DNA of 64,000 bases. Origin: Haliotis cracherodii. Its lineage: Eukaryota. Each line of letters opens with the position of its first letter. The first letter of the stretch is position 1. The stretch spans positions 20,398,001 through 20,462,000 of the forward strand of contig NW_027266270.1 of the NCBI RefSeq assembly GCF_022045235.1. Direction: 5' to 3'. The notes below the pieces were generated by a model. The model saw only the letters and a program-made list of their open reading frames with translations, did no database searches and was not told the origin of the DNA. The position numbers and the translations under genes were made by a program. Positions 121 through 62,609 of the stretch are shown here, piece after piece.

Positions 121-521
121 AATGGGGCAATGAGTGACATATTGTCATGTCATGTGTACATACTCAGCGATAACTCATCACTTCCTTCACATGAAAAGGA
201 ACCAACTGGTATCTTGTGCCCATCATTCTTGCAGTAGCAATTGTTCAGCTATGTGATATGACAGTATATTCAGCCATGTGATATGACAGTATATATACCA
301 AACACGAAAATTAAGGATCATGAATTAATTAATTTCTGCATCAGTGAGATACAACAAACATCACATGCAGACTACACTACTGGTTGACGGACCACTTTCA
401 CAAAGGGATCTCAGCATCAAGACAATCAATCGTAAGCCCATTAATCTGACCAACACCAAATTTACAGCTTTGATTCCTTTGTGAAAGTGAGGTCTGTGAT
501 ATTTTCCCAATCTGGACTTAC

Positions 522-584
522 CCTCTTGACCGGCCCATACACTTCAAACTCTCTCCTCAGTTTCGACTCGCTTGTGTCATAGTT
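522..584 (-). CDS. snRNP70: U1-70K internal coding exon ([21 protein letters not shown])
   Basis: ctgtttgcag|AACTATGAC...AAGAGG|gtaagt, 63 nt, phase 0/0. Nearly identical to human [21 protein letters not shown]. Confidence 0.97.
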
Positions 585-999: not shown

Positions 1000-3900
1000 T
1001 GTCACCCAGACCCAGCCAATACCTACATCAATCAAAATCAGGGGTCCTCAAAATTAAATTGGGAGAGAAAAGAAGCATCACTCCAACATGATAGTGAACT
1101 GAATATCCCTTTCCCCATGAATCACTGTCACATTGCCTAACCATGCACAGAACATATGATCAGTACCCAAATACTGATGAATGGTTTCTAAAGCAAATTA
1201 ATTTGATATTCTGCCATAATGGGTCCTGACATGAGGAAAAGATACTGGCACCAATATGCTTTGATGCTGAATGGGAGAGAGATGGGTTCATGCTTCTGTA
1301 AGAAGTATACAGTAAAATCCAGATCCTTCAACCGGAAACGATTATTCTTTTGGTCTTATCAACAACAATATTTAAGAATTGACTTCAATACTTTTTCATT
1401 TATATAAATAAAGAATGTAAAACACCAAAAGAATTCAAACAACTAGCCTCTATGGCCTGCAGTATTCCCAGCCAGTAGCTCTTACAAGACTACCACCCAA
1501 AGGCTGGTGACCAAGCAAAAGGAAAACATAAAAACACATTAGCATTCTGTAGTAGTTATGGATAATATATTCCCCTCATCGATATCCACATATGTTTGAG
1601 GGATGAATGAAGAAGAAGTAGCATAAAAAACATTTCTGTGTGAGGTTTAGTTTTTATGACGTCTATTTGAGAATAATGACAAATCCAATATCCCCTAATG
1701 CACTTCCAACAACAGATTCCCCTAACACCAAAATATTTGTACAATGCTTTTATATACTGTGTCGCCATCAACCATCCCACAATAGGAACCAGTCAATCTA
1801 CAGAATCAATATCTTCAGCCTTCTGAAACACAGTACTCAGCTTGTCTGATTAACAAATAAGCAATTCATTGCAATCAATTATTTTGCGGTACAGAGCTGG
1901 GTGGATTTAGCTTATGCAGAGTTGATGAAGATGAAAGCTCTCTGCTCGGTGGGAGAGTCTCGGTGGTATTCTCGCCCACCACATCATGCCATCACAGAAA
2001 TATCAGTACAAGGTTTTTTAACCCAACAAGTATAACTAAAAAGTATCTGTGTGTATTTAAGTGGCATTTTAGAAGCTGCAGTATCAACAAAAAGGGTAGC
2101 AGCATCTGTACCAAAATGTTGCATTAAAAGAATGAGGAAGTTGAAATCATCTTCAACACAAGGTATAAAATTTTCTGCTTTAATGCTGAATAAAGACAGA
2201 CAGCTGAGATTTTATTAACAGGAAATTTCATGTTAATCCTATCAAGACTGTTTGATGATACCGATATACATAAACTCCCAAAACTCTAAGATAAACCTAT
2301 CTGATAAAGGAGAAGTTGGAGGCAATAAGTTGAGTATTGTGTATATTCACCAGTTGCAACTTTAACATAATTCCACTCCTATCAAATCCAGAGATGGGAT
2401 AAATTACCATAACATCCAATGTAAATGACCATTAAGGATGATTTACACCACCATGCTGCTCCACAGAACAGATGCCATTTCAAGATCACCTTCTGCTGTG
2501 TCCCGACCAGTGGTCTGTTTATTTTGGGTAGGAACAGATGGTCTGAAGGAGAAACATTACCCATGAGGTGATACTGGGGATAACAGGTAGTAGCTTTATG
2601 CTGAGTCAAGTTACTACAATGTTGCAACCCCATGTGACAATACAATGCTCAGTTTAGTTACCATGATGTATCTAGAAGATGCTCAGCGATGTTACAACAT
2701 TGAAACTCCATACTGCTATGAGTTGATGCTTAGTCAATAAACTATGATGTGGAAACACTATACAATGTTGCAATAAAAAAGTCAATTCCAATTAGGAAAA
2801 CAACGTTGAAAAATGTTTAACTTGAATATCCATGAGTTATGGAATCATAATGCTATATTCCCTGGTGCTACAGTTTCAACACCACTGCATGTGATCCAGC
2901 CACTCAGCTCAGGAGAGCGTGGGTTGGGAGATGTATTCATGCAATGGTTTCACTCTTCAATCCTCAAACAAGCCTGTTTTTGTTATCAGTGACATGACCT
3001 TGTTTGTTTTATACTACTCAACATTTGTCAAGGGCCACCTTTGATGAAAGAAACACATTATTCTTGTCCTTGGAAACTGTTGAGCAGTATACATTCATCA
3101 TCCAGCTGCTGTTGTCACACTGTAAACGTGTCACACTGCTTTTAAGGTCATGGTCAAGGGCACCAAAAGCGAAATGGGGAGAACTCAATTTGTGCATGAC
3201 AACCAAGTGCATGAGCCACTTGCCCACCCCCTCCAGCATTTCATTTGTGTCTGCTCCAATTATTTCTGCAATCTTCAGCTACAGCAAGAAACAAGCAAGG
3301 TTCCCAGATACATGAAACCAGTTGACCAGAGTCATCAAATTCAGAGGATATTGGCCAATTTCACCACAATCTCTGGCACATTTAATGAAGTCTTTAACAT
3401 TTTTTTCTTGCTGGCCAAAAATGCATTCTTTTTCAGTCTGGTGCATCCATCCAAAAACTGCTAATCAATCTTGTACCTATCCTGCTATTAAACCGAACAT
3501 GAAAAACGTCTCTTTCCTGCGTAATCAGGCTTTTCATGTCGTAATAAGCATTGATCCATGAGATTTGGGCTCTGTTTTTACACTTAACTGCAGAATTATC
3601 CTTGCATGTGTAGACAATTAAGGCTTCCTTGGGGTAATATCCTCCAAAATTTTACAAAAATATTCCCATTTGCATTTAATGATTGGAGAAAATTTGTCTG
3701 TTTAATGCAGGAACAACAACTGGGACAAGAAGTTTTCTTTTCATCTTAGGATGATAATGGAGGGCCACTTAGCTAGTTTATCTCTAAGGAGCTGACTTGA
3801 GACGGACATTCAGTCTATCTACAGTGGTGATTGACAACCATGTATTCAAAGATCCAATCCTTCCTCAGTGATAACAATATCTGCATTACAAGATCACTTT

Positions 3901-18025: not shown

Positions 18026-19210
18026 AAGTAGCCATTGCTTGCAGCAGGAGGTCACGGTAACCTTCCCTCACTCCATCACACTATGGCGACACTCTTGTTA
18101 ACCCTATCTATTACCTAATACCAAGAACTGTCCTCAATGTCAAACACAAACAAAACGTTCACCCCCCAAAAATAATTTCCTTTTTCCGATGTCCATAATA
18201 CATCATGGTGTCACCAATATTGACCATGGATTTGCATGTGCCAACCCTTTTGAGGTTTTGCCCTCATCACCATGTTCGATACATCATTGCCTAAAGACGG
18301 CTCACTGAAAGTATATGCTACTCTTTCATCCATCAACATTTAATATTGTGTACACAAAGACTGGTAATGACAAATCCGTACTTAAAACGTCAGTTTTTAA
18401 TGTGGGTGGAGTGTAACTCACTCACACCTGGACAAACAGCCCATAAACATGATCAACCAAAACATTAATCTGAATTTCCAAAGCAACTGGCAAAATAAGT
18501 TTTTTGGCTTAATGCTTATCAGAAAGGTCTTCCACTGCTCACAAATACGTCGCGTGTTGTCTTATTATATCTCTACTTATGGTCTACTTAAGTTTTTATT
18601 TCTCCTTGAAAAGCATGTATTAGTAGGTGTATTTCCTTGAAAATCCTTATTTCATGTTGTATATATTCATTCCCCTTTAAATAGCATATATGAAAATACT
18701 TATTCCCCATGAACAGCAAATTTGAAAATATTTACATCCCATCCTTGAACACTTATGAGAATATGTATTGCCCCTTATGAAAAGCCTTTTTTCCTTCCTT
18801 TTTTCAATAGCCCTTGAACAGCTGATACAAATACAATTATTCTGCTTTAAAACGTATATATATATTAGTATATTTATTCGCCTTGTAGAAATGCAAATAT
18901 TATCTCCCAAACAGCATATATCAGAACCTTTGCTCTGTATCACATCATTTAAACCTTGAAAATCACATTTCCCTGAAGCTATTCCCCACTGAAACAGTGT
19001 ATATATATCACTAGGTTATGTACATTCAATTACGACATCCACCAAATATACCTGTCTGAGAAACACTGATATTTTGTATACAGTGACGACCACCATTTGA
19101 CACCAACATTGTAAGTTTTTGGGGTAGCTGGATGTACACTGGAGAGAGTCTGGCTCTCCTACAGCAGAAAATACCAGTTTACAATCAGTGTGTGTTGTAT
19201 CTCGAATTGC

Positions 19211-20389
19211 CTTGCACCTACACATTAACTCCACACACTGCTTGAAGGAATCCGGCCCTGCACCTACACCCAAACTCCACACACTGCTTGAAGGAATCCG
19301 GCCCTGCACCTACACCCAAACTCCACACACTGCTTGAAGGATATCAGGCCCTGCACCTACATCAACTCCACACACTGCTTGAAGGATATCAGGCCCTGCA
19401 CCTACACCCTAACTCCACACACTGCTTGTATTATATATCATGCCCTGCACCTACATCCAAACTCCACACACTGCTTGAAGGAATCAGGCCCTGCACCTAC
19501 ACCCAAACTCCACACACTGCTTGAAGGATATCAGGCCCTGCACCTACATCAACTCCACACACTGCTTGTATTATATATCATGCCCTGCACCTACATCCAA
19601 ACTCCACACACTGCTTGAAGGAATCAGGCCCTGCACCTACACCCAAACTCCACACACTGCTTGAAGGATATCAGGCCCTGCACCTACATCAACTCCACAC
19701 ACTGCTTGTATTATATATCATGCCCTGCACCTACATCCAAACTCCACACACTGCTTGAAGGAATCAGGCCCTGCACCTACACCCAAACTCCACACACTGC
19801 TTGAAGGATATCAGGCCCTGCACCTACACCCTAACTCCACACACTGCTTGTATTATATATCATGCCCTGCACCTACATCCAAACTCCACACACTGCTTGA
19901 AGGAATCAGGCCCTGCACCTACACCCAAACTCCACACACTGCTTGAAGGATATCAGGCCCTGCACCTACATCAACTCCACACACTGCTTGTATTATATAT
20001 CATGCCCTGCACCTACATCCAAACTCCACACACTGCTTGAAGGAATCAGGCCCTGCACCTACACCCAAACTCCACACACTGCTTGAAGGATATCAGGCCC
20101 TGCACCTACACCCAAACTCCACACACTGCTTGAAGGAATCAGGCCCTGCACCTACACCCAAACTCCACACACTGCTTGAAGGATATCAGGCCCTGCACCT
20201 ACACCCAAACTCCACACACTGATTGAAGGAATCAGGCCCTGCACCTACACCCAAACTCCACACACTGCTTGAAGGATATCAGGCCCTGCACCTACATCAA
20301 CTCCACACACTGATTGAAAGAATCAGGCCCTGCACCTACACCCAAACTCCACACACTGCTTGCATTATATATCATGCCCTGCACCTACA
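19211..20389. repeat. Minisatellite, 46-48-bp monomer with 140-142-bp higher-order trimer
   Basis: The variant ttgtattatatatcatg recurs at 19426, 19566, 19706, 19848 and 19988. Confidence 0.97.
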
Positions 20390-37100: not shown

Positions 37101-38129
37101 GGTCATCTCAAGACCTCAAACAAACTTAATTGAATACCAACTCCTGAGTAATATCTTCTAACGATAATGTGATGCTGTCCATGATTGATGTATTCATAAA
37201 AGAACTGACTAGTATGCTGATGAAACAGAAACATGGACCAAGGCCCGGTAGAAAGCTCTCTGTTTGTGCAACTGTGTGGCAAATAGCCCCTATGGGACAG
37301 ATGCACCTAACAGCCTTGTGAAGTGGGAAATTACTGGGAACATTTATCGGAATAATTACAAATGTGTTGCAATCAGCCAGGTCAACTGAGTATTCAAATC
37401 TGAAAGAGCACCATAAACCTCATTACACAGAGCCTACCCTATTGCTTGTATTAACACGGCACTGACAGTACAGGCAGGCCTCATAACCTGATAGTACAGC
37501 AATTACCAGTTACTTAACAGTTGGAATCCCTCAACACCTGATAACAGCAATTGTGCTAAAACCCAATTAACAAAAACATTTTCAAAAATAAATCATAGTT
37601 CCGTTTAACTGTGGAACATTTAGTAGAAATGAGGTACTTTGTTTTGTTATCTCCTGAATTAATGATATCAGTAAACATGAGATATTTCACAGCACCAGTT
37701 ACAGCATCTCGTCCTCATAGGTTAAAATCTCTTAGGGCACATTAGCAACTTGGCTCTGACAAGGAGACTATGTCAAAATGTCAAAGCCTTCATTTAACAG
37801 TATCATTATCGGTAGCCTTTTCACCCTTACGTGAAGATGTGTTCGTACCTTTTGCCCATGTAAATTCAAGAATACATTTGACTTGTATTTACCAGACAAA
37901 TCCTTTTTGGTCTTTTTTTTAATTATTAGTGGTAGCATTTGCTATTTACTGAACGGAAACAATGTGTTCTTGCTCTTCTAATCTTACAAGCCAGAGGGTT
38001 TTACTGGACTCGGCTTTGGACATGTGCTTAATTCTTCTACTGTACTTGCTTGTTATGTGTACATTGTGTGACAGCATCACAGATGAAGCAGCAGCAGTAG
38101 CAGCAACATACTGAGATGAAGCAGAATCT

Positions 38130-48176: not shown

Positions 48177-48285
48177 GGGCCCCGTTCCACAAAGCAATCG
48201 TATCACTACCTCAGTCACAAGTCTATGTTGAAATATGGGAGTTACGACCAACTCAGTTCTTCAATCGCCTTGTGGAACAGAGCCT
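48177..48285. mobile_element. ~110-bp PIF/Harbinger-like MITE; relatives at 388-495, 6027-6141, 46745-46865, 48419-48530
   Basis: TIR ggccccgttccacaaag / cttgtggaacagagcc, with internal ttacga/tcgta motifs shared among copies. Confidence 0.65.
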
Positions 48286-49100
48286 GATCTGAGGCAATAG
48301 CAGCCATATACCAAATTACAAAACAGCTCCTTTTCCGACATTATGTAACTTCGCAGTGGTTTTTACAAACCTATTTTCTTGATTAATATCAGAGTTCAAC
48401 AAATATGTCTTACCAGGAAGCTGAACGTTGTACAAAGCGATCTTAGCGCTAAGGTGATCGTAACTCTCATACCTTAACATAGACTTACGACAGTCGTAGC
48501 GCTAAGGTTGTTCTGTACAACGGGCCACTGGTATACAAAATGAGACTGATCCTTAAATATTCCCAATGATTCTAAATTATTGTTCTGATGTTACTGGCAC
48601 TGCCTTGAGTTTCAGCGAATTTGTTGAACCCTGACTGGTGCTTATGCCTCCTAAGATCAGAGTTGTCACTGACTGGAAATTTAGGTATTGCTATAAATCA
48701 ACTCAATAGAATCCTGATGCAGTGATTAATAATGAAAAAGATCATTCTGTATGTGTAAAGATAAAAATTACCTATTGATAAAAATTCATTTCTGCCTTAT
48801 TATCATTGTCTCTATTTACCATGGGAATCTTGATAAATGGGAACGTTTCTGTGCCCGTGAATTATTAATTCAATATCGATATTTGTTAATTTGCATGATA
48901 CAGTATCAAACTCAGGAATTTAGGAACTTAGGAATTTATCAATATATTGATATTGGGGCTGTACACAGTATACATGTTTTTGCATAAAATAATGACAAAC
49001 GGGGAATCCTATTTCCTGTCCATCAACCGTCACAAATATATTGATGTCAGAACTCAAAGAATGACTATTTTATAAGACATGTTTCGCTTTGAAGAAATGA

Positions 49101-49460
49101 GTGGTGATGGTGAATGGGGTTTAACTTTGCATCCAAGATTATTGCACTTATATAGAGCGACGTGCATGTACGTGTGTGTGTGTTTGTGTGGCTGCTTGTA
49201 CTCGTCCGGACTGATGGCGATTTATAGTGCTAGCTCACTGATATACCATGCCGCAACTTTAACATGAAAACCCCACACAGACACAGTATACTGACTCCGA
49301 GCCGACCAGTCCTTGTTTTGGCCCCTTAATGCCGAGCGCCAGACAGGGTAACAACAAGTTCCATCTTTTATTGTCTTTTGGTATGACGCGGCCGGGGATC
49401 GAACCCCGGACCTTCCGCTCTCCAGGCGGACGCTCTACCACTAGACCATGGAGGCGGTCC
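49101..49460 (-). mobile_element. tRNA-headed SINE family C (Meta/MESC-core type), full length
   Basis: A and B boxes (TGGTCTAGTGG, GGTTCGATCCC). Core GTCATACCAAAAGAC...GCATTAAGGG...CAGTGAGCTAGCACTATAAA, which I recall as typical of mollusc MetaSINEs. TSD tgaagaaatga at 49090-49100 and 49461-49471. Confidence 0.88.
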
Positions 49461-49618: not shown

Positions 49619-49677
49619 GATTCTTGCAATAAATAGAGTCTTGTAGGCTTCACCGGGTGCAGTGGAGGCTGGGTCCC
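49619..49677 (-). CDS. snRNP70: U1-70K internal coding exon ((W)DPASTAPGEAYKTLFIARI), RNP2 of the RRM
   Basis: tgctgtttcag|GGGACCCA...AGAATC|gtaagt, 59 nt. Homologous to human [22 protein letters not shown]. Confidence 0.96.
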
Positions 49678-49981: not shown

Positions 49982-50563
49982 CATACCATCCATAACGTCA
50001 TACCAGGGATGTAATGAGCTACCATCCATAATGTCATACCAGGGATGTATTGAGATACCATCCATAACGTCATACCATGGATGTATTGAGATACCATCCA
50101 TAATGTCATACCAGGGATGTAATGAGCTACAATCCATAACGTCATACCAGGGATGTAATGAGCTACCATCCATAATGTCATACCAGGGATGTAATGAGCT
50201 ACAATCAATAATGTCATACCAGGGATGTATTGAGATACCATCCATAACGTCATACCATGGATGTATTGAGATACCATCCATAATGTTATATCAGGGATGT
50301 AATGAGCTACCATCCATAATGTCATACCAGGGATGTAATGTGATACCATCCATAATGTCATACCAGGGATGTAATGAGCTACCATCCATAATGTCATACC
50401 AGGGATGTAAAGTGATACCATCCATAATGTCATACCAGGGATGTAATTTGATACCATCCATAACTTCATACCAGGGATTTAATGAGATACCATCCATAAC
50501 ATCAGACCAGGGATGTAATGAGCTACCATCCATAACATCAAACCAGGGATGTAATGAGATACA
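49982..50563. repeat. Minisatellite, 39-bp unit, ~15 copies
   Basis: taccatccataatgtcataccagggatgtaatgagc.. repeated; this explains the periodic ORFs on both strands. Confidence 0.97.
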
Positions 50564-51466
50564 TCACAGAAACTAAATATTTATGACTTTCACAATGCAC
50601 CTGAGTAGTTGTCAACAACATTAATACATGCTTCATACAACAGAAGTCCTTTCCAAATATCACCCATATCTTGGTAATGCATGAATGATCAATATATATC
50701 TTTCCGCGGCCTTGACAGTCATCTCCTGAATGTCAATGCAGGTCTCTAACATGTTTTGAAACCTAAACTATGGCTCAACCTAGTCATTGCTCGAATTAAT
50801 TCTAAAAAAATTTAGGAATGCACAAATTAAGCACCGATAATTAGTAACATGCTAAATATATTTTTTCATGTGAAAGAACCATAAGAAAGAAAACAATCGT
50901 GTATCAATTATACGCAGCTGTCTTAATATGTTAACATCAATTAAAGTCCAAATACAATCAAAATCAAACAAACAGTACTGATAAAAGTGTTCTACTGACT
51001 GAAATATTTCCTCACACGATTTAGAAGAGGAGAGGAGTGGGGATGGAAAGAGGGGAGTGGAGAACAAGGGGGAGAGAGGAGCAAGGAGTGGTTAAAGAAT
51101 ATTCTCCTTCCATTACCATAAGAAATTCCATATTCTATTTCCTACTGAGAGATTGTACCAAGTACAGAGATCAAACTTAAGTGCAGGAGCACAAGGTTTG
51201 GCAAACCCTTCAATAAAACAGATAAATAGATCGAGTTACTAACAGATAAATTTTAAATAGGTTTTACATGAATAATTTAGGTTGAAGTGTAGTAATCCTT
51301 TAATTTTTTTATCACTTAAATACAAATTTGGTGCAAATACATGTTTTCCCCCCTTTTAATATCAAAATAGCTTGTTTAAGAGTTGGATGAGATCAGAAAC
51401 TATCATGCCAAGGTATTTAAAGTGTATTTTAGGATACAGCCTAATGGTGACGGTCAGTCAGGATAT

Positions 51467-51731
51467 ATCTGTCTCTCCAATACGCTGAGGTCGAGACAAT
51501 TGTTACTTCTCCACCACACATAGCGTGCCAGAGACTTCCTTTTCCTGGGTTTTACTACACACAAGTTCATAACGACCAAGAATGTGAAAACCCCAGGGAC
51601 ATGCAATATCAAAGTTTATCATATAGATAGAGTAGCTGGACTCCAGTCCTGCCGGGAATAAACCTGATAGCCACACACTGGTAAATACACATTCACAATG
51701 CACAGCACTGTTAATTCAGCTTCTGTTATTA
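51467..51731 (-). ncRNA. Candidate intronic structured RNA (H/ACA snoRNA/scaRNA-like with 5' extension), copy 1
   Basis: Four hairpins supported by G.U pairs on the minus strand. H box AAAGGA at 51542-51537 and ACA at 51472-51470. Identical to copy 2. Confidence 0.55.
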
Positions 51732-52302
51732 CCAAGACTCATTACAGACCCTAATGGTATCCTTTCATCAACATTTGGTAAAAATGCTTTGAACTGATTA
51801 AGTATTTGTAACTGACTGGTTCATGTTTTTAAATGAGGAATTGGGACCACATTAATGAAAAAAATCATATACTACTCAAAAGAAGTTAAAGAACACCCAA
51901 TCTTTCATATTAGTATAGTAACTCTGTCATAAATCAAGTACTCATAATTTACTTTTTCCATTACCATAAGAAATCCGATGTTATATTTCCCTACCGAAAT
52001 GCTAGCCCCATCATGAAACAAGAGCAGTTTGGCAAACATTTCAGGAAAACAGATAAATACAATTCCGGTCCTGAAGAAATACAATTGGAGGTTTTGCAGT
52101 TTAAAAAAAAATTAGCTTAGAGAATAAGAAATCATTATTTTTGTCGCGCTTAAACACATACTGGGTGCAAAAACATGTTTTCCCCCTTCTTTTTATATGC
52201 AAATAGCTTGTTTAAGAGTTGGATAAGATCAGTAACTATCATGCCAAGGTATTTAAAGTGTATTTTAGTATAAGGCCTAATGGTGACGGTCAGCCAGGAT
52301 AT

Positions 52303-52567
52303 ATCTGTCTCTCCAATACGCTGAGGTCGAGACAATTGTTACTTCTCCACCACACATAGCGTGCCAGAGACTTCCTTTTCCTGGGTTTTACTACACACAA
52401 GTTCATAACGACCAAGAATGTGAAAACCCCAGGGACATGCAATATCAAAGTTTATCATATAGATAGAGTAGCTGGACTCCAGTCCTGCCGGGAATAAACC
52501 TGATAGCCACACACTGGTAAATACACATTCACAATGCACAGCACTGTTAATTCAGCTTCTGTTATTA
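52303..52567 (-). ncRNA. Candidate intronic structured RNA, copy 2
   Basis: Exact copy of the above at an offset of +836. Confidence 0.55.
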
Positions 52568-52668
52568 TCAAGACTCATTACAGACCCTAATGGTATCCCT
52601 TCATCAACTTTTGGAGAAATGCTTTGATCTGATTAAGTATTTGTAACTGAGTGGGTCTTGAAAGAAGG

Positions 52669-52986
52669 CAGTAAGGTGAAATGGGGTTTAACGTCACGTT
52701 CATGACTATTGCACTTAAACTGAGTGTATATGTGTGCATGTGCATGTACTAATGCCAATTGTATAGTGCTAGCCCTCTGACATACCTTTGCCACAGTTTA
52801 ACATGAACACCCCATTCAGACAGTAAACTGACTTCGAGATGACCAGTCCTTGTTTTAGCCCCTAAATGCCAAGATTGAGGCAGGGTAACAACAAGTACCT
52901 TCTTTTGCTACAACGTGGCCGAGGATCAAACCCCGACCTCCCACTCTCAGGGTAGATGCTCCACCTCTAGACCACAAGAGTTGGTC
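52669..52986 (-). mobile_element. SINE family C, diverged copy inserted into duplication copy 2
   Basis: Aligns to 49101-49460. Imperfect TSD cttgaaa(g/t)aagg. Confidence 0.82.
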
Positions 52987-53030
52987 CTTGAAATAAGGAA
53001 TTGGGATCACGAAATGAAAAGGATCATATA

Positions 53031-53122
53031 TACTACTCAAAGATAGAGAACACCAGATTCTGTCATGATCGACTACAGTAATATGAAAGAATCATGTCTT
53101 CTTTAACTTCTTTTGAGTAGTA
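53031..53122. mobile_element. Short TA-flanked MITE (tactactcaaa...tttgagtagta); half copy at 51870-51915
   Basis: Terminal inverted repeats are visible; related sequence at ~45560-45735. Confidence 0.6.
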
Positions 53123-54234
53123 TTTGTCAACATTGCTCACACAATTACTAACAAGATCAAAAACAGCATAAGATTTGAACTACTTCATATTTTAAATTTC
53201 ATCTAAAATCAGATTCAAAAGTTATTGCCTTGTGGTAAGCATTTGTGTCCACCAGCACTTGATAAATTTCGTGTAAAATACACAGCAAAGTGTCAATTTC
53301 GTCAAAATCAACAAAGGATAACTTATTCTGAGCTTGTATATTGTTTATTAATGTTCTCAGAGAAGTTGTGAGCCTAAAAGACATATAATGTTCTGTCCGT
53401 ATCACCATCTCATTCAAACCCTGCTTCAAGATTACCATGGACGACAGTCCCTTGAGAAATCTTCCAGCTCACAAGACAAGAGTCAATGCAAGACAATACC
53501 AGCAGAAATCAATCATTAATAACTACAGGAAAATCAAACAGGCAGGATAAATTTTTTTTGGTCAAAGAGTCAAATTAGCTGCTGTGACTATAGTAAAATC
53601 AAACATCTTGTAAGACACAATCAATTGCAGTGTAACCAGCTTGGAGGAGTTGTGTCCCTTTAAGTGTTTCTGAGAAACTGAAAAAAGAAGTTTGGTAGCT
53701 CAATTATCTACAGTGCTTCCTACAGGGCTCGAAAATCAGGGGTCCTTGTCAAAGCCCTAATGCTAAAAGTTCTATGGGTGGCCATATTCAACGACAAGTC
53801 TTTTACCCTTCCTGTCCTGCTGAATTTTCCCAAATTGACTACACGTGCCCAAACCTTTACTAATCTACATGGCCAAACTTGTCACTTGACATCCTTTCCA
53901 GTCGACTTTACTGTGGAAAAAATGGCAGTTATGCTTTCTGACCAAACAAAATGTTGCTAGACCCAGGCTCCTGACTAGTGGTTTAATTTGCAGAATGTGA
54001 AATAACCCCAGGAAACAGAGATGTCATGATGTGCATGTTTCATGTATCGATGCGTATCACAATACACGAGTCACGATACAATACATTCGTACAAATTGTA
54101 TGCACGTTGCATATAGACTAGCAAACAAGTAGAGGCTGGTGTCAATTAGTTGTGCTTACATAGCAGTAATGGGTTAATGCAAGTCATTTCTAATTGCATT
54201 CTGCCATCAGATTCACCATGTAACATGACTGGCA

Positions 54235-54341
54235 GTACTTAGCATAAATCCTGCTTTATGACGACTGCCTGTAAATAACTGAGCCAGGTCTAGACAAACA
54301 AGTGATTGACATCATGAGCAACAATCCATGCTGCTGAAAGA
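54235..54341 (-). mobile_element. SINE family B, internally deleted fragment
   Basis: ctgtaaataa..agtgattgacatcatgagca..ctgaa. Confidence 0.6.
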
Positions 54342-54346
54342 TACAT

Positions 54347-54588
54347 TTTGTGGTTTATGCTGACAGCCTGAAATGTTTATATACGGCAGATATATTTTTC
54401 CAGAATTTAATTGCCCATATTGCGGGTGCATATTACACACGAGTGCGGATTATACACAAATATATAGGTCTATTGTACATTGATCAATCGGAAGGGGTGC
54501 TAATTGTGATTGTTCACCAGCCAATGTATTAGCAAATATCGACGTGGGCGCTTATAAGAGCGGTGCGCTTATTACGTCGAATACGGTA
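54347..54588. mobile_element. Truncated copy of the same MITE
   Basis: Aligns to 33728-33969, including the right TIR. Confidence 0.85.
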
Positions 54589-56628
54589 GTTGTAATAAAT
54601 ATCAATCTGAAACTTTACTAAAAGTGAACTGAATTCTTTAACTATTTAGAATTTAAGTTTGAACAAAGGACTAATGTCAGTTTCTAATGCTACCAAGCTT
54701 TAACCAAAATACCTGAGCCTAAAGCAGGTAATGTGTTGCTTGCTTGTTTAGAAAATATTTTGTTAATGATGCCTTCACTTAGCCTGTGTTTTTGATGGTA
54801 AACCCCTTGCACCTTTCCTTTTTTATGTGGTTCTGATAAAATAACTTCTCCCAATCTGAACCGAAATGGACAGAGATTTGATGCCTACGGTCTTCACAAC
54901 AAGTTTCAAATATTTACAAAGGGAATAATTGTTGAACCTTTCAAAATTTGAATAACAAGCAAACTCAGCAAACATAGGGCGACCAAGACTAATGGAGATC
55001 TGCCATTCATATTTCATTGCCTTGTTTACAGAGAATGTGTAAATCTGGTGAAAAATGTGCAGGATCCATTTTATCGAACACATGAAATCTTGGCCACCAG
55101 ACAATATCAAGCTGTGCTCAAAATGACCTTTTCTTTGCATATAGAGAATGTGACAATCTTTGATGTTTGACAAAAAACGTGCAACAAAATTGCTTAAGCG
55201 GATAATTCAAACAAGCACTTGGCCTAAAATATGTTGCTGTATTCTCTCTCATCTTTCAGTACATGAAAAACAAGTGCAAAAACTCATATCACAGAGTTGT
55301 CTCCCTTTGACTGATTGTCCAAGTGCAAATGAAGATTTTTTAACCAGTTCTGTCTTGAAGACATCTACACATTTCTTAAGAATATAATTATCTACAAAAT
55401 AAAGAACTTAAAAATGTGTTTCTTCCAAAATTGAAACCATATTCATGACAAATGATTTCTTTTGATTAAATAACTATCTTCTAAAGATGAAAGATACCAT
55501 AGTGTCAAGTGGAATCAAAAGTGTTTCAGTAAAAATACAATCAAAAATATACATTTTTAGCCACAGTTACAGAAATTACTTAAAATCGCACTGGTAAAAT
55601 TGGCACCAAGGTTATTTACTTTTTACTATCAATCAACCCTCCCAAGTCCCTATGATCAATGATTTTCTTGGTCCAAAGATCTTAAGAATTAGCAAGAGTT
55701 ATCTCCCTTCTACCATGCCACATTGGAATGGAACAAAGATAACAAACTTGTCAATGCAGACACAGCAATGTAAAGGCATTCACTATTAAGAGGTTGTCAA
55801 ATTGTTTCAGACAGGTTGGGATACATGCAACCCAAAAAATATTTCTAACACTGACCTTTCTCCATGTTTATCCATCAGTATCCAAGGAATGCATTGGATA
55901 ATTGCTACAAGTAATATGCTGTACATTGAAACTAATCTCTGTCATTAATCGGATGATAAGTGTGAAGAAAATTAAGTCGTTTTCCCTGTAATCCATATTT
56001 TCCTCTTATCCACATTAGATAACTACGGGAGCATAAATTCTTGATAATTTAATAATCATAACATTTAAGGCACACATAAAAGTTCAGGGACACTTATCAA
56101 TCTGTACTAGCTATTTAATATACATTTCTTATCACAAATGCTTCCAATAAAGATATACCTCAAAATGAAAACAAACAAAAAATGTGTTCGGTTTTCAAAT
56201 TTTATTAAAAAATACTTTCACATATAACCATTCGTTCTATAAACAGTCAATATGAAAGCCAAGTTCTGACTGTTTGAAGTTTTCTATTTTATATTTTTCC
56301 TTTCAACATCCTTCCCTCCTTATGACACTGTTATTACAGTGAGTCTACATGCCCTTCCGACTCAATTGACTTCCTTCAAACATTATACTAGCCAGACCAT
56401 TCCCTCTTGTCACTACCAGACCAAAACTAATGGACACAATGCCACCATCCACCTATAGCACGTACAAATAGACTCACACTGCAGAAGCCCTAGAATAATG
56501 ATCAATGGAGAAGGCCCCTAAGGACTATATGTTTAAGTAATCTATGTCAAAGATTAGAAACTATATTTAATATAGTGCCAACAAAACTAGGGTAATTACT
56601 AATTTCATGGGTCCTTAGAGGAATTTTT

Positions 56629-62554: not shown

Positions 62555-62609
62555 AAAGGGCCAGGTCCTGTTCCAACTTGTAGGCATGCTGTTCAGCCCG
62601 CTCCTTGCG
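62555..62609 (-). CDS. snRNP70: U1 snRNP 70 kDa protein, internal coding exon (RKERAEQHAYKLEQDLAL + first base of W)
   Basis: Minus strand reads ccatttcag|CGCAAGGAG...GCCCTTT|gtaagt. 55 nt, ends in phase 1. The peptide matches the U1-70K helix before the RRM and joins the next exon in frame as T|GG = Trp. Confidence 0.95.

What the first reader, a model, noticed from the sequence alone, without database searches (positions are those of the whole stretch)
51439..52610. Twin 273-bp perfectly conserved cores in an old duplication: a candidate undescribed extended H/ACA-type RNA hosted in snRNP70
Seen: 51459-51731 and 52295-52567 are identical. The rest of the ~840-bp duplication has many substitutions and indels, and copy 2 carries an already decayed SINE, so the duplication is old but the core has not drifted. 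On the host (minus) strand the core folds into four hairpins. HP0 (51706-51670, GCUGUGCAUUG/CAGUGUGUGGC) has five G.U pairs and so works only on this strand. HP1 is 51669-51607 and HP2 is 51597-51544. An H box AAAGGA, HP3 (51535-51473) and ACA+3 nt follow. Established: hairpin-H-hairpin-ACA of ~130 nt is the H/ACA architecture, and G.U/U.G stems mark some Cajal-body scaRNAs. Inference: an intron-encoded H/ACA RNA with a ~110-130-nt 5' extension. It lacks the U17/snR30 m1/m2 motifs and a telomere template, and matches no family I recognise. Recent gene conversion is the alternative explanation.
Basis: partly seen in the sequence, partly recalled or inferred. Interest (0 to 1): 0.85.

Follow-up and report, generated by a model that had tools for sequence, protein, structure and literature searches.

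The report
Gene-converted intron duplicate, possible H/ACA snoRNA
Two identical 273-base stretches in an intron of an abalone's snRNP70 gene were most likely made identical by one copy overwriting the other (gene conversion); each holds a normal-sized, snoRNA-like (H/ACA) fold that may or may not be a real small RNA, and the proposed long "extended" RNA has no support.

Summary
Window 51459-51731 and 52295-52567 are identical (273/273) and are the only two copies in the 1.18-Gb genome. They sit in an old ~836-bp tandem duplication whose other aligned parts are about 77% alike. The site is a 12.9-kb phase-1 intron of snRNP70 on the minus strand.

Gene conversion explains the identity better than selection. 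Related species (~4% diverged in this intron) carry 2-3 substitutions and a 4-nt insertion in the core. The paralogues are therefore more alike than the orthologues. Contig depth and gaps suggest the homogenised tract has different limits in a relative.

The 3' 131 nt on the host strand (51597-51467; 52433-52303) does form hairpin-AAAGGA-hairpin-ACA. A strict scan finds that architecture in only ~0.2-0.9% of comparable stretches, and it recovers all three copies of an H/ACA-like element in EEF1G. This genome has many multi-copy intronic snoRNAs according to earlier scan notes; this locus was not among them.

Against a real RNA:
- no convincing guide pocket or rRNA/snRNA target
- weak fold z-scores
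- no Rfam match
- no RNA data

The 5' "extension" has no H/ACA features and changes between species at close to the intron's background rate.

My odds: canonical-size orphan H/ACA snoRNA pair ~35%; extended RNA ~6%.

The parts
51459..51731 (.). identical core, copy 1 (273 bp)
   Evidence: Exact identity to 52295-52567, with mismatches at 51458 and 51732.
52295..52567 (.). identical core, copy 2 (273 bp)
   Evidence: In relatives the orthologous stretch carries 52348 C>A (species D), 52483 T>G and 52487 G>A (D and E), and +ATAA after 52522 (D).
51098..51945 (.). tandem duplication, unit 1
   Evidence: Alignment of the two units.
51946..53140 (.). tandem duplication, unit 2, with a ~327-bp high-copy repeat inserted at 52661-52987
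   Evidence: Contig depth is 10^5-10^6 over 52600-53000 in run X14, against ~35 for single-copy sequence.
51467..51597 (-). H/ACA-like unit, copy 1: 5' hairpin 51597-51544, H box AAAGGA 51542-51537, 3' hairpin 51535-51473, ACA 51472-51470, then 3 nt
   Evidence: Folds; strict architecture scan, sum -35.2 kcal/mol; box coordinates.
52303..52433 (-). H/ACA-like unit, copy 2 (copy 1 shifted by +836): ACA at 52308-52306
   Evidence: The species-D change at 52348 turns a G.G mismatch in the upper stem of the 3' hairpin into U.G (-1.3 kcal/mol).
51598..51731 (-). the proposed '5' extension' (HP0 51706-51670, HP1 51669-51607), copy 1
   Evidence: Fold z-scores -1.47 and -0.67. No second H/ACA unit under relaxed rules. 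In relatives the matching part of copy 2 carries two substitutions and a 4-nt insertion.
62556..62609 (-). snRNP70 exon upstream of the host intron (…RKERAEQHAYKLEQDLAL, ends T|GTAAGT)
   Evidence: tblastn of P0001; sequence.
49619..49676 (-). snRNP70 exon downstream of the host intron (…cag|GG GAC CCA … ATC|GTAAGT; WDPASTAPGEAYKTLFIARI)

Best explanation
**What it is.** The twin 273-bp cores are a tract of non-allelic gene conversion (concerted evolution). The tract lies between the two units of an old tandem duplication inside a 12.9-kb intron of snRNP70.

**How it arose.**
- The duplication predates the split of this abalone from its close relatives.
- Its outer parts have diverged and taken up a repeat insertion.
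- The centre has been copied from one unit onto the other recently, so it is identical.
- The ends of the identical stretch are therefore the ends of the last conversion event. They are not the ends of an RNA.

**What the tract contains.** On the host strand each copy has one ordinary-sized (131 nt) H/ACA-box-like unit. It may be an orphan intronic snoRNA present in two copies. The ~134 nt upstream of it, the proposed 'extension', is sequence carried along by the conversion.

**Shown:** the identity, its uniqueness in the genome, the host intron, the differences between species, and the rarity of the architecture.

**Inferred:** conversion as the mechanism, and any RNA product.
For: 1. Paralogues are more alike than orthologues.
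   - The two copies differ at 0 of 273 positions.
   - Species D differs from this genome in the core by 3 substitutions plus a 4-nt insertion in 251 nt. Species E shares two of those substitutions.
   - That pattern is the operational definition of concerted evolution (abstract of PMC2720389).
2. The rates rule out independent evolution of the two cores.
   - The rest of the intron differs between A and D by 145/3612 = 4.0% (table 8). The core runs at about 0.3 of that rate.
   - The near flanks of the paralogues differ by 10.5-13%.
   - Independent evolution would predict about 9 core differences (my arithmetic). None is seen, so P is about 1e-4.
3. The borders are sharp. There is a mismatch directly at each end, then ~11% mismatches.
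4. The duplication is older than the species. A contig from species E runs from the end of a core, through the spacer and the unit junction at 51945/51946, into a core (record 9).
5. The homogenised tract seems to differ between species.
   - In D, the contig on 52042-52545 has depth 61.5, against 23-40 for its neighbours.
   - Nothing from D lies on 51200-51599.
6. The core is richer in G+C (0.40-0.49) than its flanks (0.23-0.37). That fits biased conversion or function.
7. For the embedded H/ACA-like unit, see the first rival explanation.
Against: - Without an outgroup, the shared D/E states at 52483 and 52487 cannot be polarised. They could have arisen in the D/E lineage alone.
- The evidence from relatives comes from short-read contigs. 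It cannot show directly that both copies in D or E carry the same species-specific letters.
- A gap in contig coverage proves nothing, as the tool itself warns.
- The segment 52042-52545 is less diverged between A and D (8/504 = 1.6%) than the rest of the intron (4.0%). Some purifying selection therefore probably acts as well. Selection and conversion are not exclusive.
Confidence: 0.62

Rival explanations
1. Each core holds a real intron-encoded orphan H/ACA snoRNA of canonical size (~131 nt; 51597-51467 and 52433-52303, minus strand). It would be released from the snRNP70 intron and bound by dyskerin. Both copies would be kept by selection and homogenised by conversion, as in other multi-copy intronic snoRNA clusters of this genome. 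This adds to the conversion reading rather than replacing it.
For: - **Rarity of the architecture.**
  - A strict hairpin-ANANNA-hairpin-ACA scan finds only 6 places in both strands of the 64-kb window. Two are the cores, at -35.2 kcal/mol.
  - It finds 2 of 1200 composition-matched random 273-mers, and none at -35 or lower.
  - It finds about 13 independent loci in 400 kb of arbitrarily chosen genome, 5 of them at -35 or lower.
  - That is about 0.2-0.9% per stretch of this size.
- **Positive control.** The same scan recovers all three copies of the EEF1G H/ACA-like element and nothing else in 20 kb. That control also has no Rfam match.
- **Layout and position.**
  - The unit is on the host's sense strand, and the hinge AAAAGGAA is unpaired.
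  - With the pocket held open, the 3' hairpin has a 7-bp lower stem, a 12/8-nt pocket, and an upper stem 16 nt from ACA.
- **Species changes.**
  - Only 1 change in 131 nt in species D, against 4% background. It closes a G.G mismatch.
- **Genome context.** Earlier scan notes report many multi-copy intronic snoRNAs in this genome.
Against: - No significant target in the genome's own 18S, 5.8S, 28S, U1, U2, U4, U5 or U6.
  - The best hit is 18S U780, score 22. That score is reached by 25% of shuffled target sets.
  - Hits for the 3' hairpin fall below the best reversed-target control score.
- In both hairpins the pocket strands pair with each other in the minimum-energy fold.
- The unit's fold has z = -1.49 and a diffuse ensemble (frequency 0.0005). 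The control has z from -2.0 to -2.6 and frequency 0.13.
- No Rfam match at E <= 10.
- The identical tract is twice the unit's length.
- No covariation is available.
- No RNA evidence. The runs labelled 'RNA?' cover scattered intron pieces at equal depth, so they behave like low-coverage DNA.
Confidence: 0.35
2. One reading: a single, undescribed extended H/ACA-type RNA of ~240-270 nt, made of four hairpins (HP0-HP3). The 5' extension would be functional, as in a Cajal-body or U17-like RNA.
For: - The identical tract spans all four hairpins.
- Its 3' border lies 8 nt past the predicted 3' end.
- HP0 and HP1 can fold.
- From my own knowledge: tandem or composite scaRNAs of this size exist in vertebrates.
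Against: - HP0 and HP1 fold no better than shuffles, z = -1.47 and -0.67.
- The 5' half has no second H box or ACA, AUA, AGA or AAA box unit, even under relaxed rules.
- There is no UGAG (CAB) motif in the loops of the two H/ACA hairpins (sequence).
- In relatives the extension carries 2 substitutions and a 4-nt insertion in ~112 nt, close to the intron background.
- The whole 273 nt gives z = -0.68.
- The tract borders are better explained as conversion end points.
Confidence: 0.06
3. The core is a cis-acting splicing control element of snRNP70, such as a poison exon or decoy splice-site cassette. It would work like the conserved exon 7a region in vertebrate SNRNP70, here duplicated.
For: - Vertebrate SNRNP70 keeps a highly conserved intronic region with an alternative 3' splice site and a cluster of cryptic 5' splice sites. 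U1 snRNP binds them for feedback control (PMC3798272).
- The core is richer in G+C than the intron.
- The minus strand has AG sites after pyrimidine runs and several GUAA motifs (sequence).
- Divergence between species is reduced.
Against: - It lies in a different intron. This one sits before residue 88, upstream of the RRM, whereas the vertebrate element is in intron 7.
- No motif matches this gene's own splice-site pattern (yyyyyycag| and |GTAAGT).
- There are no RNA data.
- The core is not invariant between close species.
Confidence: 0.07
4. An assembly or polishing artefact made two similar copies look identical.
For: Identical repeats can come from consensus polishing.
Against: - An independent short-read contig of a related species closes on itself through a core. 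That is what two near-identical cores in tandem would give (record 9).
- Nine other runs of the same species, from three studies, hold 43-73% of the stretch's words.
- The borders are single mismatches inside otherwise well-aligned flanks.
Confidence: 0.03

Closest known systems
Interlocus (non-allelic) gene conversion / concerted evolution of tandem paralogues
   Same: - Paralogues are more alike than orthologues.
- A sharply bounded identical tract of a few hundred bases sits inside older, diverged duplicates.
- Divergence along the repeat unit is mosaic.
- The tract appears to have different limits in related species.
   Different: The duplicated unit here is intronic non-coding DNA, not a gene pair. 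Reduced divergence between species hints at some constraint as well.
Multi-copy intron-encoded H/ACA box snoRNAs (e.g. the triplicated EEF1G element of this same genome)
   Same: - Both lie on the sense strand of a housekeeping host gene.
- Copies are tandem within the same 2.3-kb stretch of the host gene, spaced 0.7-1.4 kb.
- Both have the hairpin-ANANNA-hairpin-ACA layout at ~125-131 nt, with similar summed hairpin energy.
- Neither has an Rfam match.
   Different: - The EEF1G copies have a well-defined fold (z from -2.0 to -2.6), a compensatory pair change between copies, and a plausible 5.8S target in one copy.
- The snRNP70 unit has none of these.
- Its conserved block is twice the RNA's length.
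Vertebrate SNRNP70 intron 7 / exon 7a feedback element (PMC3798272)
   Same: A conserved non-coding block inside an intron of the same gene family.
   Different: It is in a different intron. No matching splice-site cluster has been shown and no RNA evidence exists. The block here is not invariant between close species.
Composite or tandem H/ACA scaRNAs, U17/snR30, and telomerase RNA H/ACA domains
   Same: They are RNAs of 200-450 nt that contain an H/ACA domain plus further parts.
   Different: - No CAB box lies in the terminal loops.
- The 3' hairpin has no m1/m2 pair.
- There is no second H/ACA domain.
- There is no telomere template on the sense strand. A 7-nt ACCCTAA lies in the flank, but on the opposite strand.

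Membership tests
H/ACA box RNA | Hairpin - hinge with H box (ANANNA) - hairpin - ACA, total ~120-140 nt | tested here: met
   - Layout: 51597-51544 hairpin, AAAGGA, 51535-51473 hairpin, ACA at 51472.
- Rarity: 2/1200 random 273-mers pass the scan. About 13 loci pass in 400 kb of genome.
H/ACA box RNA | ACA lies exactly 3 nt from the mature 3' end; a discrete stable RNA bound by dyskerin | not testable with these tools
   No RNA run was available. Runs X15, X18 and X20, guessed to be RNA, behave as low-coverage DNA.
H/ACA box RNA | Pseudouridylation pocket 14-16 nt from the box, with two-part complementarity to an rRNA or snRNA uridine | tested here: inconclusive
   - The pocket geometry is possible, but the two pocket strands pair with each other.
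- The best targets (18S U780, U1668, U1306) are no better than shuffled or reversed controls.
- By my memory-based mapping to human and yeast sites, none is a known pseudouridine.
- An orphan RNA remains possible.
H/ACA box RNA | Structure kept across species (covariation) | tested here: inconclusive
   Only one substitution falls in the unit (species D, 52348). It converts a G.G mismatch to U.G. No two-sided changes are available.
H/ACA box RNA | Match to a curated family (Rfam) | tested here: not met
   No match on either strand at E <= 10. This has little weight, because the EEF1G control has none either.
scaRNA (Cajal-body H/ACA) | CAB box (UGAG) in the terminal loops of the hairpins | tested here: not met
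   The loops read GGUCGUUAUGAAC and AGUAACAAUUG and contain no UGAG (sequence and fold).
U17/snR30 | m1 and m2 motifs on opposite strands of an internal loop of the 3' hairpin | tested here: not met
   Reading the sequence: only a partial UAUUCC, and it is in HP1, not the 3' hairpin. ACCAU occurs only outside the core.
Gene conversion tract (concerted evolution) | Paralogues more similar than orthologues over a bounded stretch | tested here: met
   0/273 differences between the copies. At least 3 substitutions plus a 4-nt insertion in 251 nt against species D, and 2 substitutions against E.
Gene conversion tract (concerted evolution) | Both copies in each species share that species' own variants | tested here: inconclusive
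   - Suggested by the single unbranched contigs.
- Suggested by the doubled depth in D (61.5 against 23-40).
- Suggested by the self-closing contig in E.
- Short-read contigs cannot separate the two copies.
Autoregulatory poison-exon cassette (vertebrate SNRNP70 exon 7a type) | Spliced inclusion that brings in a stop codon; cluster of U1-bound 5' splice sites; same intron | not testable with these tools
   There are no RNA junction data. The intron position differs.

The most novel reading that the evidence does not exclude
snRNP70, which encodes a core U1 snRNP protein, hosts a two-copy orphan H/ACA RNA in molluscs that has no rRNA or snRNA guide function. It could be a non-guide H/ACA RNP, possibly with the upstream hairpins as a functional extension. 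Its copies would be kept identical by conversion because dosage or exact sequence matters.
Probability: 0.1. Interest if true: 0.6.

Novelty: new member of a known kind. Interest (0 to 1): 0.3.

Why it matters
- **A lesson for the scan.** Perfect identity inside an old duplication does not by itself show selection. Here close relatives differ in the core while the paralogues do not, which points to conversion. The limits of the identical tract should not be read as RNA ends.
- **If the 131-nt unit is real.**
  - It would add snRNP70 to the hosts of multi-copy intronic snoRNAs in abalone.
  - It would be an orphan H/ACA RNA.
  - That would be of modest interest to snoRNA annotators and of small general consequence.
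- **Reusable method.** The strict architecture scan, with its measured false-positive rate and positive control, can be applied to the other snoRNA claims made for this genome.

Tried and rejected
- **Rfam.** The region at E <= 10 and the whole window at E <= 0.1 gave nothing on the core.
- **Core ORF as a proxy for cross-species DNA.** A protein search with the 66-aa ORF of the core found no candidate.
- **Orthologous loci.** Deeper conservation could not be tested.
- **Metagenome scan.** A scan with a 25-mer of the core found nothing.
- **Runs labelled 'RNA?'.** X15, X18 and X20 cover scattered intron pieces at the same depth as the core. I treat them as DNA and draw no conclusion about expression. 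The three 'RNA?' runs of the window's own species hold none of the words. That is uninformative for a small non-polyadenylated RNA.
- **Shares of words in relatives.** Shares of 0.17-0.32 at first looked like core-specific conservation. They fit a uniform ~4% divergence (0.96^31 is about 0.28), so I dropped that reading.
- **Second H/ACA unit.** None was found in the 5' half.
- **Box C/D reading.** Only AUGAUAA is present, which lacks the key G, and no terminal stem was found by reading the sequence.
- **Telomerase template.** There is only a 7-nt ACCCTAA, on the opposite strand in the flank.
- **Mobile-element reading.**
  - A 9-bp direct repeat CCTAATGGT flanks the core (51441-51449 and 51751-51759, and again around copy 2).
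  - With only two copies in the genome, both in homologous context, a transposon is unlikely.
- **Flanking 7-bp inverted repeat (AGGATAC/GTATCCT).** It is not kept in copy 2.
- **Choice of stretch for read laying.** Any splice junctions to that exon could therefore not have been seen.
- **Human 18S positions.** The modification positions I used to judge targets come from my memory. No such letters were sent to any tool.
Full report
**1. The observation**

Window 51459-51731 and 52295-52567 are identical at all 273 positions. A mismatch sits directly outside each end. A search of the whole 1.18-Gb assembly finds only these two copies, so this is not a high-copy element.

The two stretches are the centre of a tandem duplication with a period of ~836 bp. 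Unit 1 is ~51098-51945 and unit 2 is ~51946-53140.

| Part of the duplication | Identity between units |
|---|---|
| Core (273 nt) | 100% |
| First 95-150 nt on each side | 87-90% (10 differences in 95 nt, 20 in 150 nt) |
| Further out | 33-78% per 40-column block |
| Whole aligned unit | 85.6% over 729 nt (~77% without the core) |

Unit 2 carries a ~327-bp insert (52661-52987) that unit 1 lacks. Its depth in other runs marks it as a high-copy repeat. With ~11% mismatches next door, an uninterrupted run of 273 matches has a probability of about 1e-14 (my arithmetic).

**2. Host gene**

The N-terminal exon of a U1-70K gene lies 10.6 kb beyond the window's end, on the minus strand. With that exon as query, the protein library returned P0001 (394 aa, 100% identical over the exon). 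P0001 has the domains U1snRNP70_N and RRM_1.

P0001 maps to three minus-strand exons in the window: 62609-62556, 49676-49619 and ~584-516. The splice borders are clean: cag|…T|GTAAGT and cag|GG…ATC|GTAAGT. The finding therefore lies in a 12.9-kb phase-1 intron of snRNP70, before residue 88 and upstream of the RRM.

**3. Why the cores are identical**

Reads were laid on four runs of related species.

*The runs.*
- Run X14 (species D, ~35x DNA) covers the intron in contigs that differ from the window by 145 of 3,612 bases (4.0%). These are close relatives.
- The three runs guessed to be RNA cover scattered intron pieces at the same low depth as the core. For X18 these are 50605-50802, 53288-53444, 53627-53831 and 54826-55360. 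I treat all three as low-coverage DNA, and they say nothing about expression.

*The core differs between species.*

| Position (window) | Change | Species |
|---|---|---|
| 52348 | C>A | D |
| 52483 | T>G | D and E |
| 52487 | G>A | D and E |
| after 52522 | +ATAA | D |

Orthologues therefore differ where the two paralogues of this genome do not. This is the operational mark of concerted evolution (PMC2720389).

*The rates.*
- The core evolves at about 0.3 of the intron's rate between species.
- The paralogous near flanks differ by ~11%.
- Independently evolving cores should then differ at about nine sites. None is seen, so P is about 1e-4.

*Age of the duplication.* A contig of species E runs from the end of a core, through the spacer and the unit junction, into a core (record 9). 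The duplication is thus older than the species split.

*Tract limits differ between species.* In D, the contig over 52042-52545 has about twice the depth of its neighbours (61.5 against 23-40). Nothing from D lies on 51200-51599. This fits a longer homogenised tract in D. The tool warns that gaps prove nothing, so I hold this as inference.

*Conclusion.* The identity is a recent conversion tract of at least 273 bp. Its borders are those of the last event. Without an outgroup the D/E states cannot be polarised, and contigs cannot separate the two copies. Direct proof needs long reads of the relatives.

**4. Is there an RNA gene inside?**

*Database and whole-core fold.*
- Rfam finds nothing on the core at E <= 10.
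- The whole 273 nt folds no better than shuffles on the host strand (z = -0.68). It folds slightly better on the other strand (z = -1.80).
- The four proposed hairpins fold as drawn, with these z-scores:

| Hairpin | z-score |
|---|---|
| HP0 | -1.47 |
| HP1 | -0.67 |
| HP2 | -1.82 |
| HP3 | -2.33 |

*Strict architecture scan.* I wrote a scan with these rules: two single hairpins of 45-75 nt, each closed by three pairs; ANANNA within 4 nt between them; ACA within 2 nt after the second.

| Sequence scanned | Hits |
|---|---|
| Both strands of the 64-kb window | 6 places, all on the minus strand; two are the cores (-35.2 kcal/mol) |
| 1,200 random 273-mers with the core's dinucleotide make-up | 2 pass, none at -35 or lower |
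| 400 kb of arbitrarily chosen genome | ~13 independent loci, 5 at -35 or lower |

A stretch of this size therefore shows the architecture by chance about 0.2-0.9% of the time.

*Positive control.*
- The scan found exactly its three copies and nothing else in 20 kb.
- The copies show a compensatory G-C to U-A change and have no Rfam match either.
- The architecture in the snRNP70 cores is therefore a real and unusual feature, on the correct strand. It occurs in a genome where multi-copy intronic snoRNAs are said to be common.

*Points against a real RNA.*
- **Fold quality.** The control folds into a well-defined structure (z from -2.0 to -2.6, frequency 0.13). The candidate does not (z = -1.49, frequency 0.0005).
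- **Guide targets.**
  - I took the genome's own 18S, 5.8S, 28S, U1, U2, U4, U5 and U6 and searched for two-part guide complementarity with the 13-17-nt spacing rule.
  - For the 5' hairpin the best site is 18S U780, with 11 pairs, all A/U-rich. Shuffled targets reach its score 25% of the time.
  - For the 3' hairpin a canonical pocket exists only if a 5-bp self-pairing is opened. Its best hits are 18S U1668 and U1306, below the best reversed-target control score.
  - By my memory-based mapping, none is a known pseudouridine site.
- **The 5' half.** It has no second H/ACA unit even under relaxed rules. There are no CAB boxes, no m1/m2 motifs and no template.
- **Where the species changes fall.**
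  - The 5' extension has two substitutions and the insertion in ~112 nt.
  - The 131-nt unit has one substitution.
  - That one substitution closes a G.G mismatch in the upper stem of the 3' hairpin.
  - This direction fits a constrained 131-nt unit with a hitch-hiking extension, but the numbers are too small to be significant.

**5. Weighing**

The conversion explanation for the identity is strong. The question of an RNA gene is open.

| Reading | My odds |
|---|---|
| Canonical-size orphan H/ACA snoRNA pair (compatible with conversion) | ~35% |
| Extended 240-270-nt RNA | ~6% |
| Splicing control cassette of the kind known in vertebrate SNRNP70 intron 7 (PMC3798272) | ~7% |
| Assembly artefact | ~3% |
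| Neutral converted duplicate with a chance fold | the remainder |

**6. What could not be done**

- A protein search with the core's ORF and a metagenome scan were blank.
- The single run search and the single read-laying run were used, so this species' own reads and true RNA libraries were not examined.
- I kept the 36-bp tandem array and the coding exon out of the laid stretch, so junctions to that exon could not be seen.

**7. Novelty and interest**

Gene conversion between tandem intronic duplicates is ordinary. A two-copy orphan H/ACA snoRNA in snRNP70 would be a new member of a known kind. The scan has noted multi-copy intronic snoRNAs elsewhere in this genome, but not this locus. I score interest at 0.3.

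Noticed in passing
window 37364-37512 (-): A second hairpin-AUACAA-hairpin-ACA candidate on the snRNP70 sense strand, in the next intron (49 kb). Its summed energy is -35.3 kcal/mol and it is single-copy in the genome. The fold z-score is only -0.63.
   Followed up: partly
window 48270-48421, 19132-19277, 3190-3318 (all -): Three weaker H/ACA-architecture hits. All six hits in the window lie on the host gene's sense strand and none on the other strand. With five independent loci this could be chance.
   Followed up: no
window 49983-50562: A 36-bp tandem array of about 16 copies, ~90% alike, just upstream of the exon at 49676. It creates long spurious ORFs on both strands.
   Followed up: no
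window 49393-49448 (-): A tRNA-like match (Rfam tRNA, 32.4 bits, E = 0.007), probably the head of a tRNA-derived SINE.
   Followed up: no
window 51866-51896 and 53096-53126; also 54200-54600: A 31-nt inverted repeat pair (94% complementary) lies at the edges of very high-copy repeats. Contig depths there are 10^3-10^6 in all four runs, and many contigs skip 51890-53075 with other letters in between.
   Followed up: no
window 51441-51449 / 51751-51759 and 52277-52285 / 52586-52594: A 9-bp direct repeat CCTAATGGT flanks each core, about 10-20 nt outside the identical tract. It looks like a target-site duplication, but the enclosed ~300 bp has only these two copies in the genome.
   Followed up: partly
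L017 6035-6154, 7444-7563, 8159-8278 (-) (EEF1G, G000:C45:62192001-62202000): Three copies of an H/ACA-like element, spaced 1409 and 715 bp. They show a compensatory G-C to U-A change between copies and a block kept for ~45 nt past ACA. There is no Rfam match. One copy gives a 12-bp match to 5.8S U17.
   Followed up: partly
L017 5134-5223: A near-perfect palindromic hairpin gives sub-threshold matches to several unrelated miRNA families on both strands (best: mir-5014, 50.7 bits, against a gathering score of 101).
   Followed up: no
G000:C34:17600162-17680481: U4 and U6 snRNA genes alternate in one tandem array with a period of ~1,487 bp and more than 40 units. U1 (565 bp, C6), U2 (1,164 bp, C5) and U5 (630 bp, C10) also form long tandem arrays.
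   Followed up: no
L024 252-2225 (+) (G000:C6:4000001-4010000): A satellite array of hairpin-forming units repeatedly passes the H/ACA architecture scan, at -36 to -47 kcal/mol. It is a source of false positives for any such scan in this genome.
   Followed up: no
window 516-584 and 49619-49676 (-): The snRNP70 intron after the exon at 49619 is about 49 kb long. The gene spans more than 75 kb and runs off both ends of the window.
   Followed up: no
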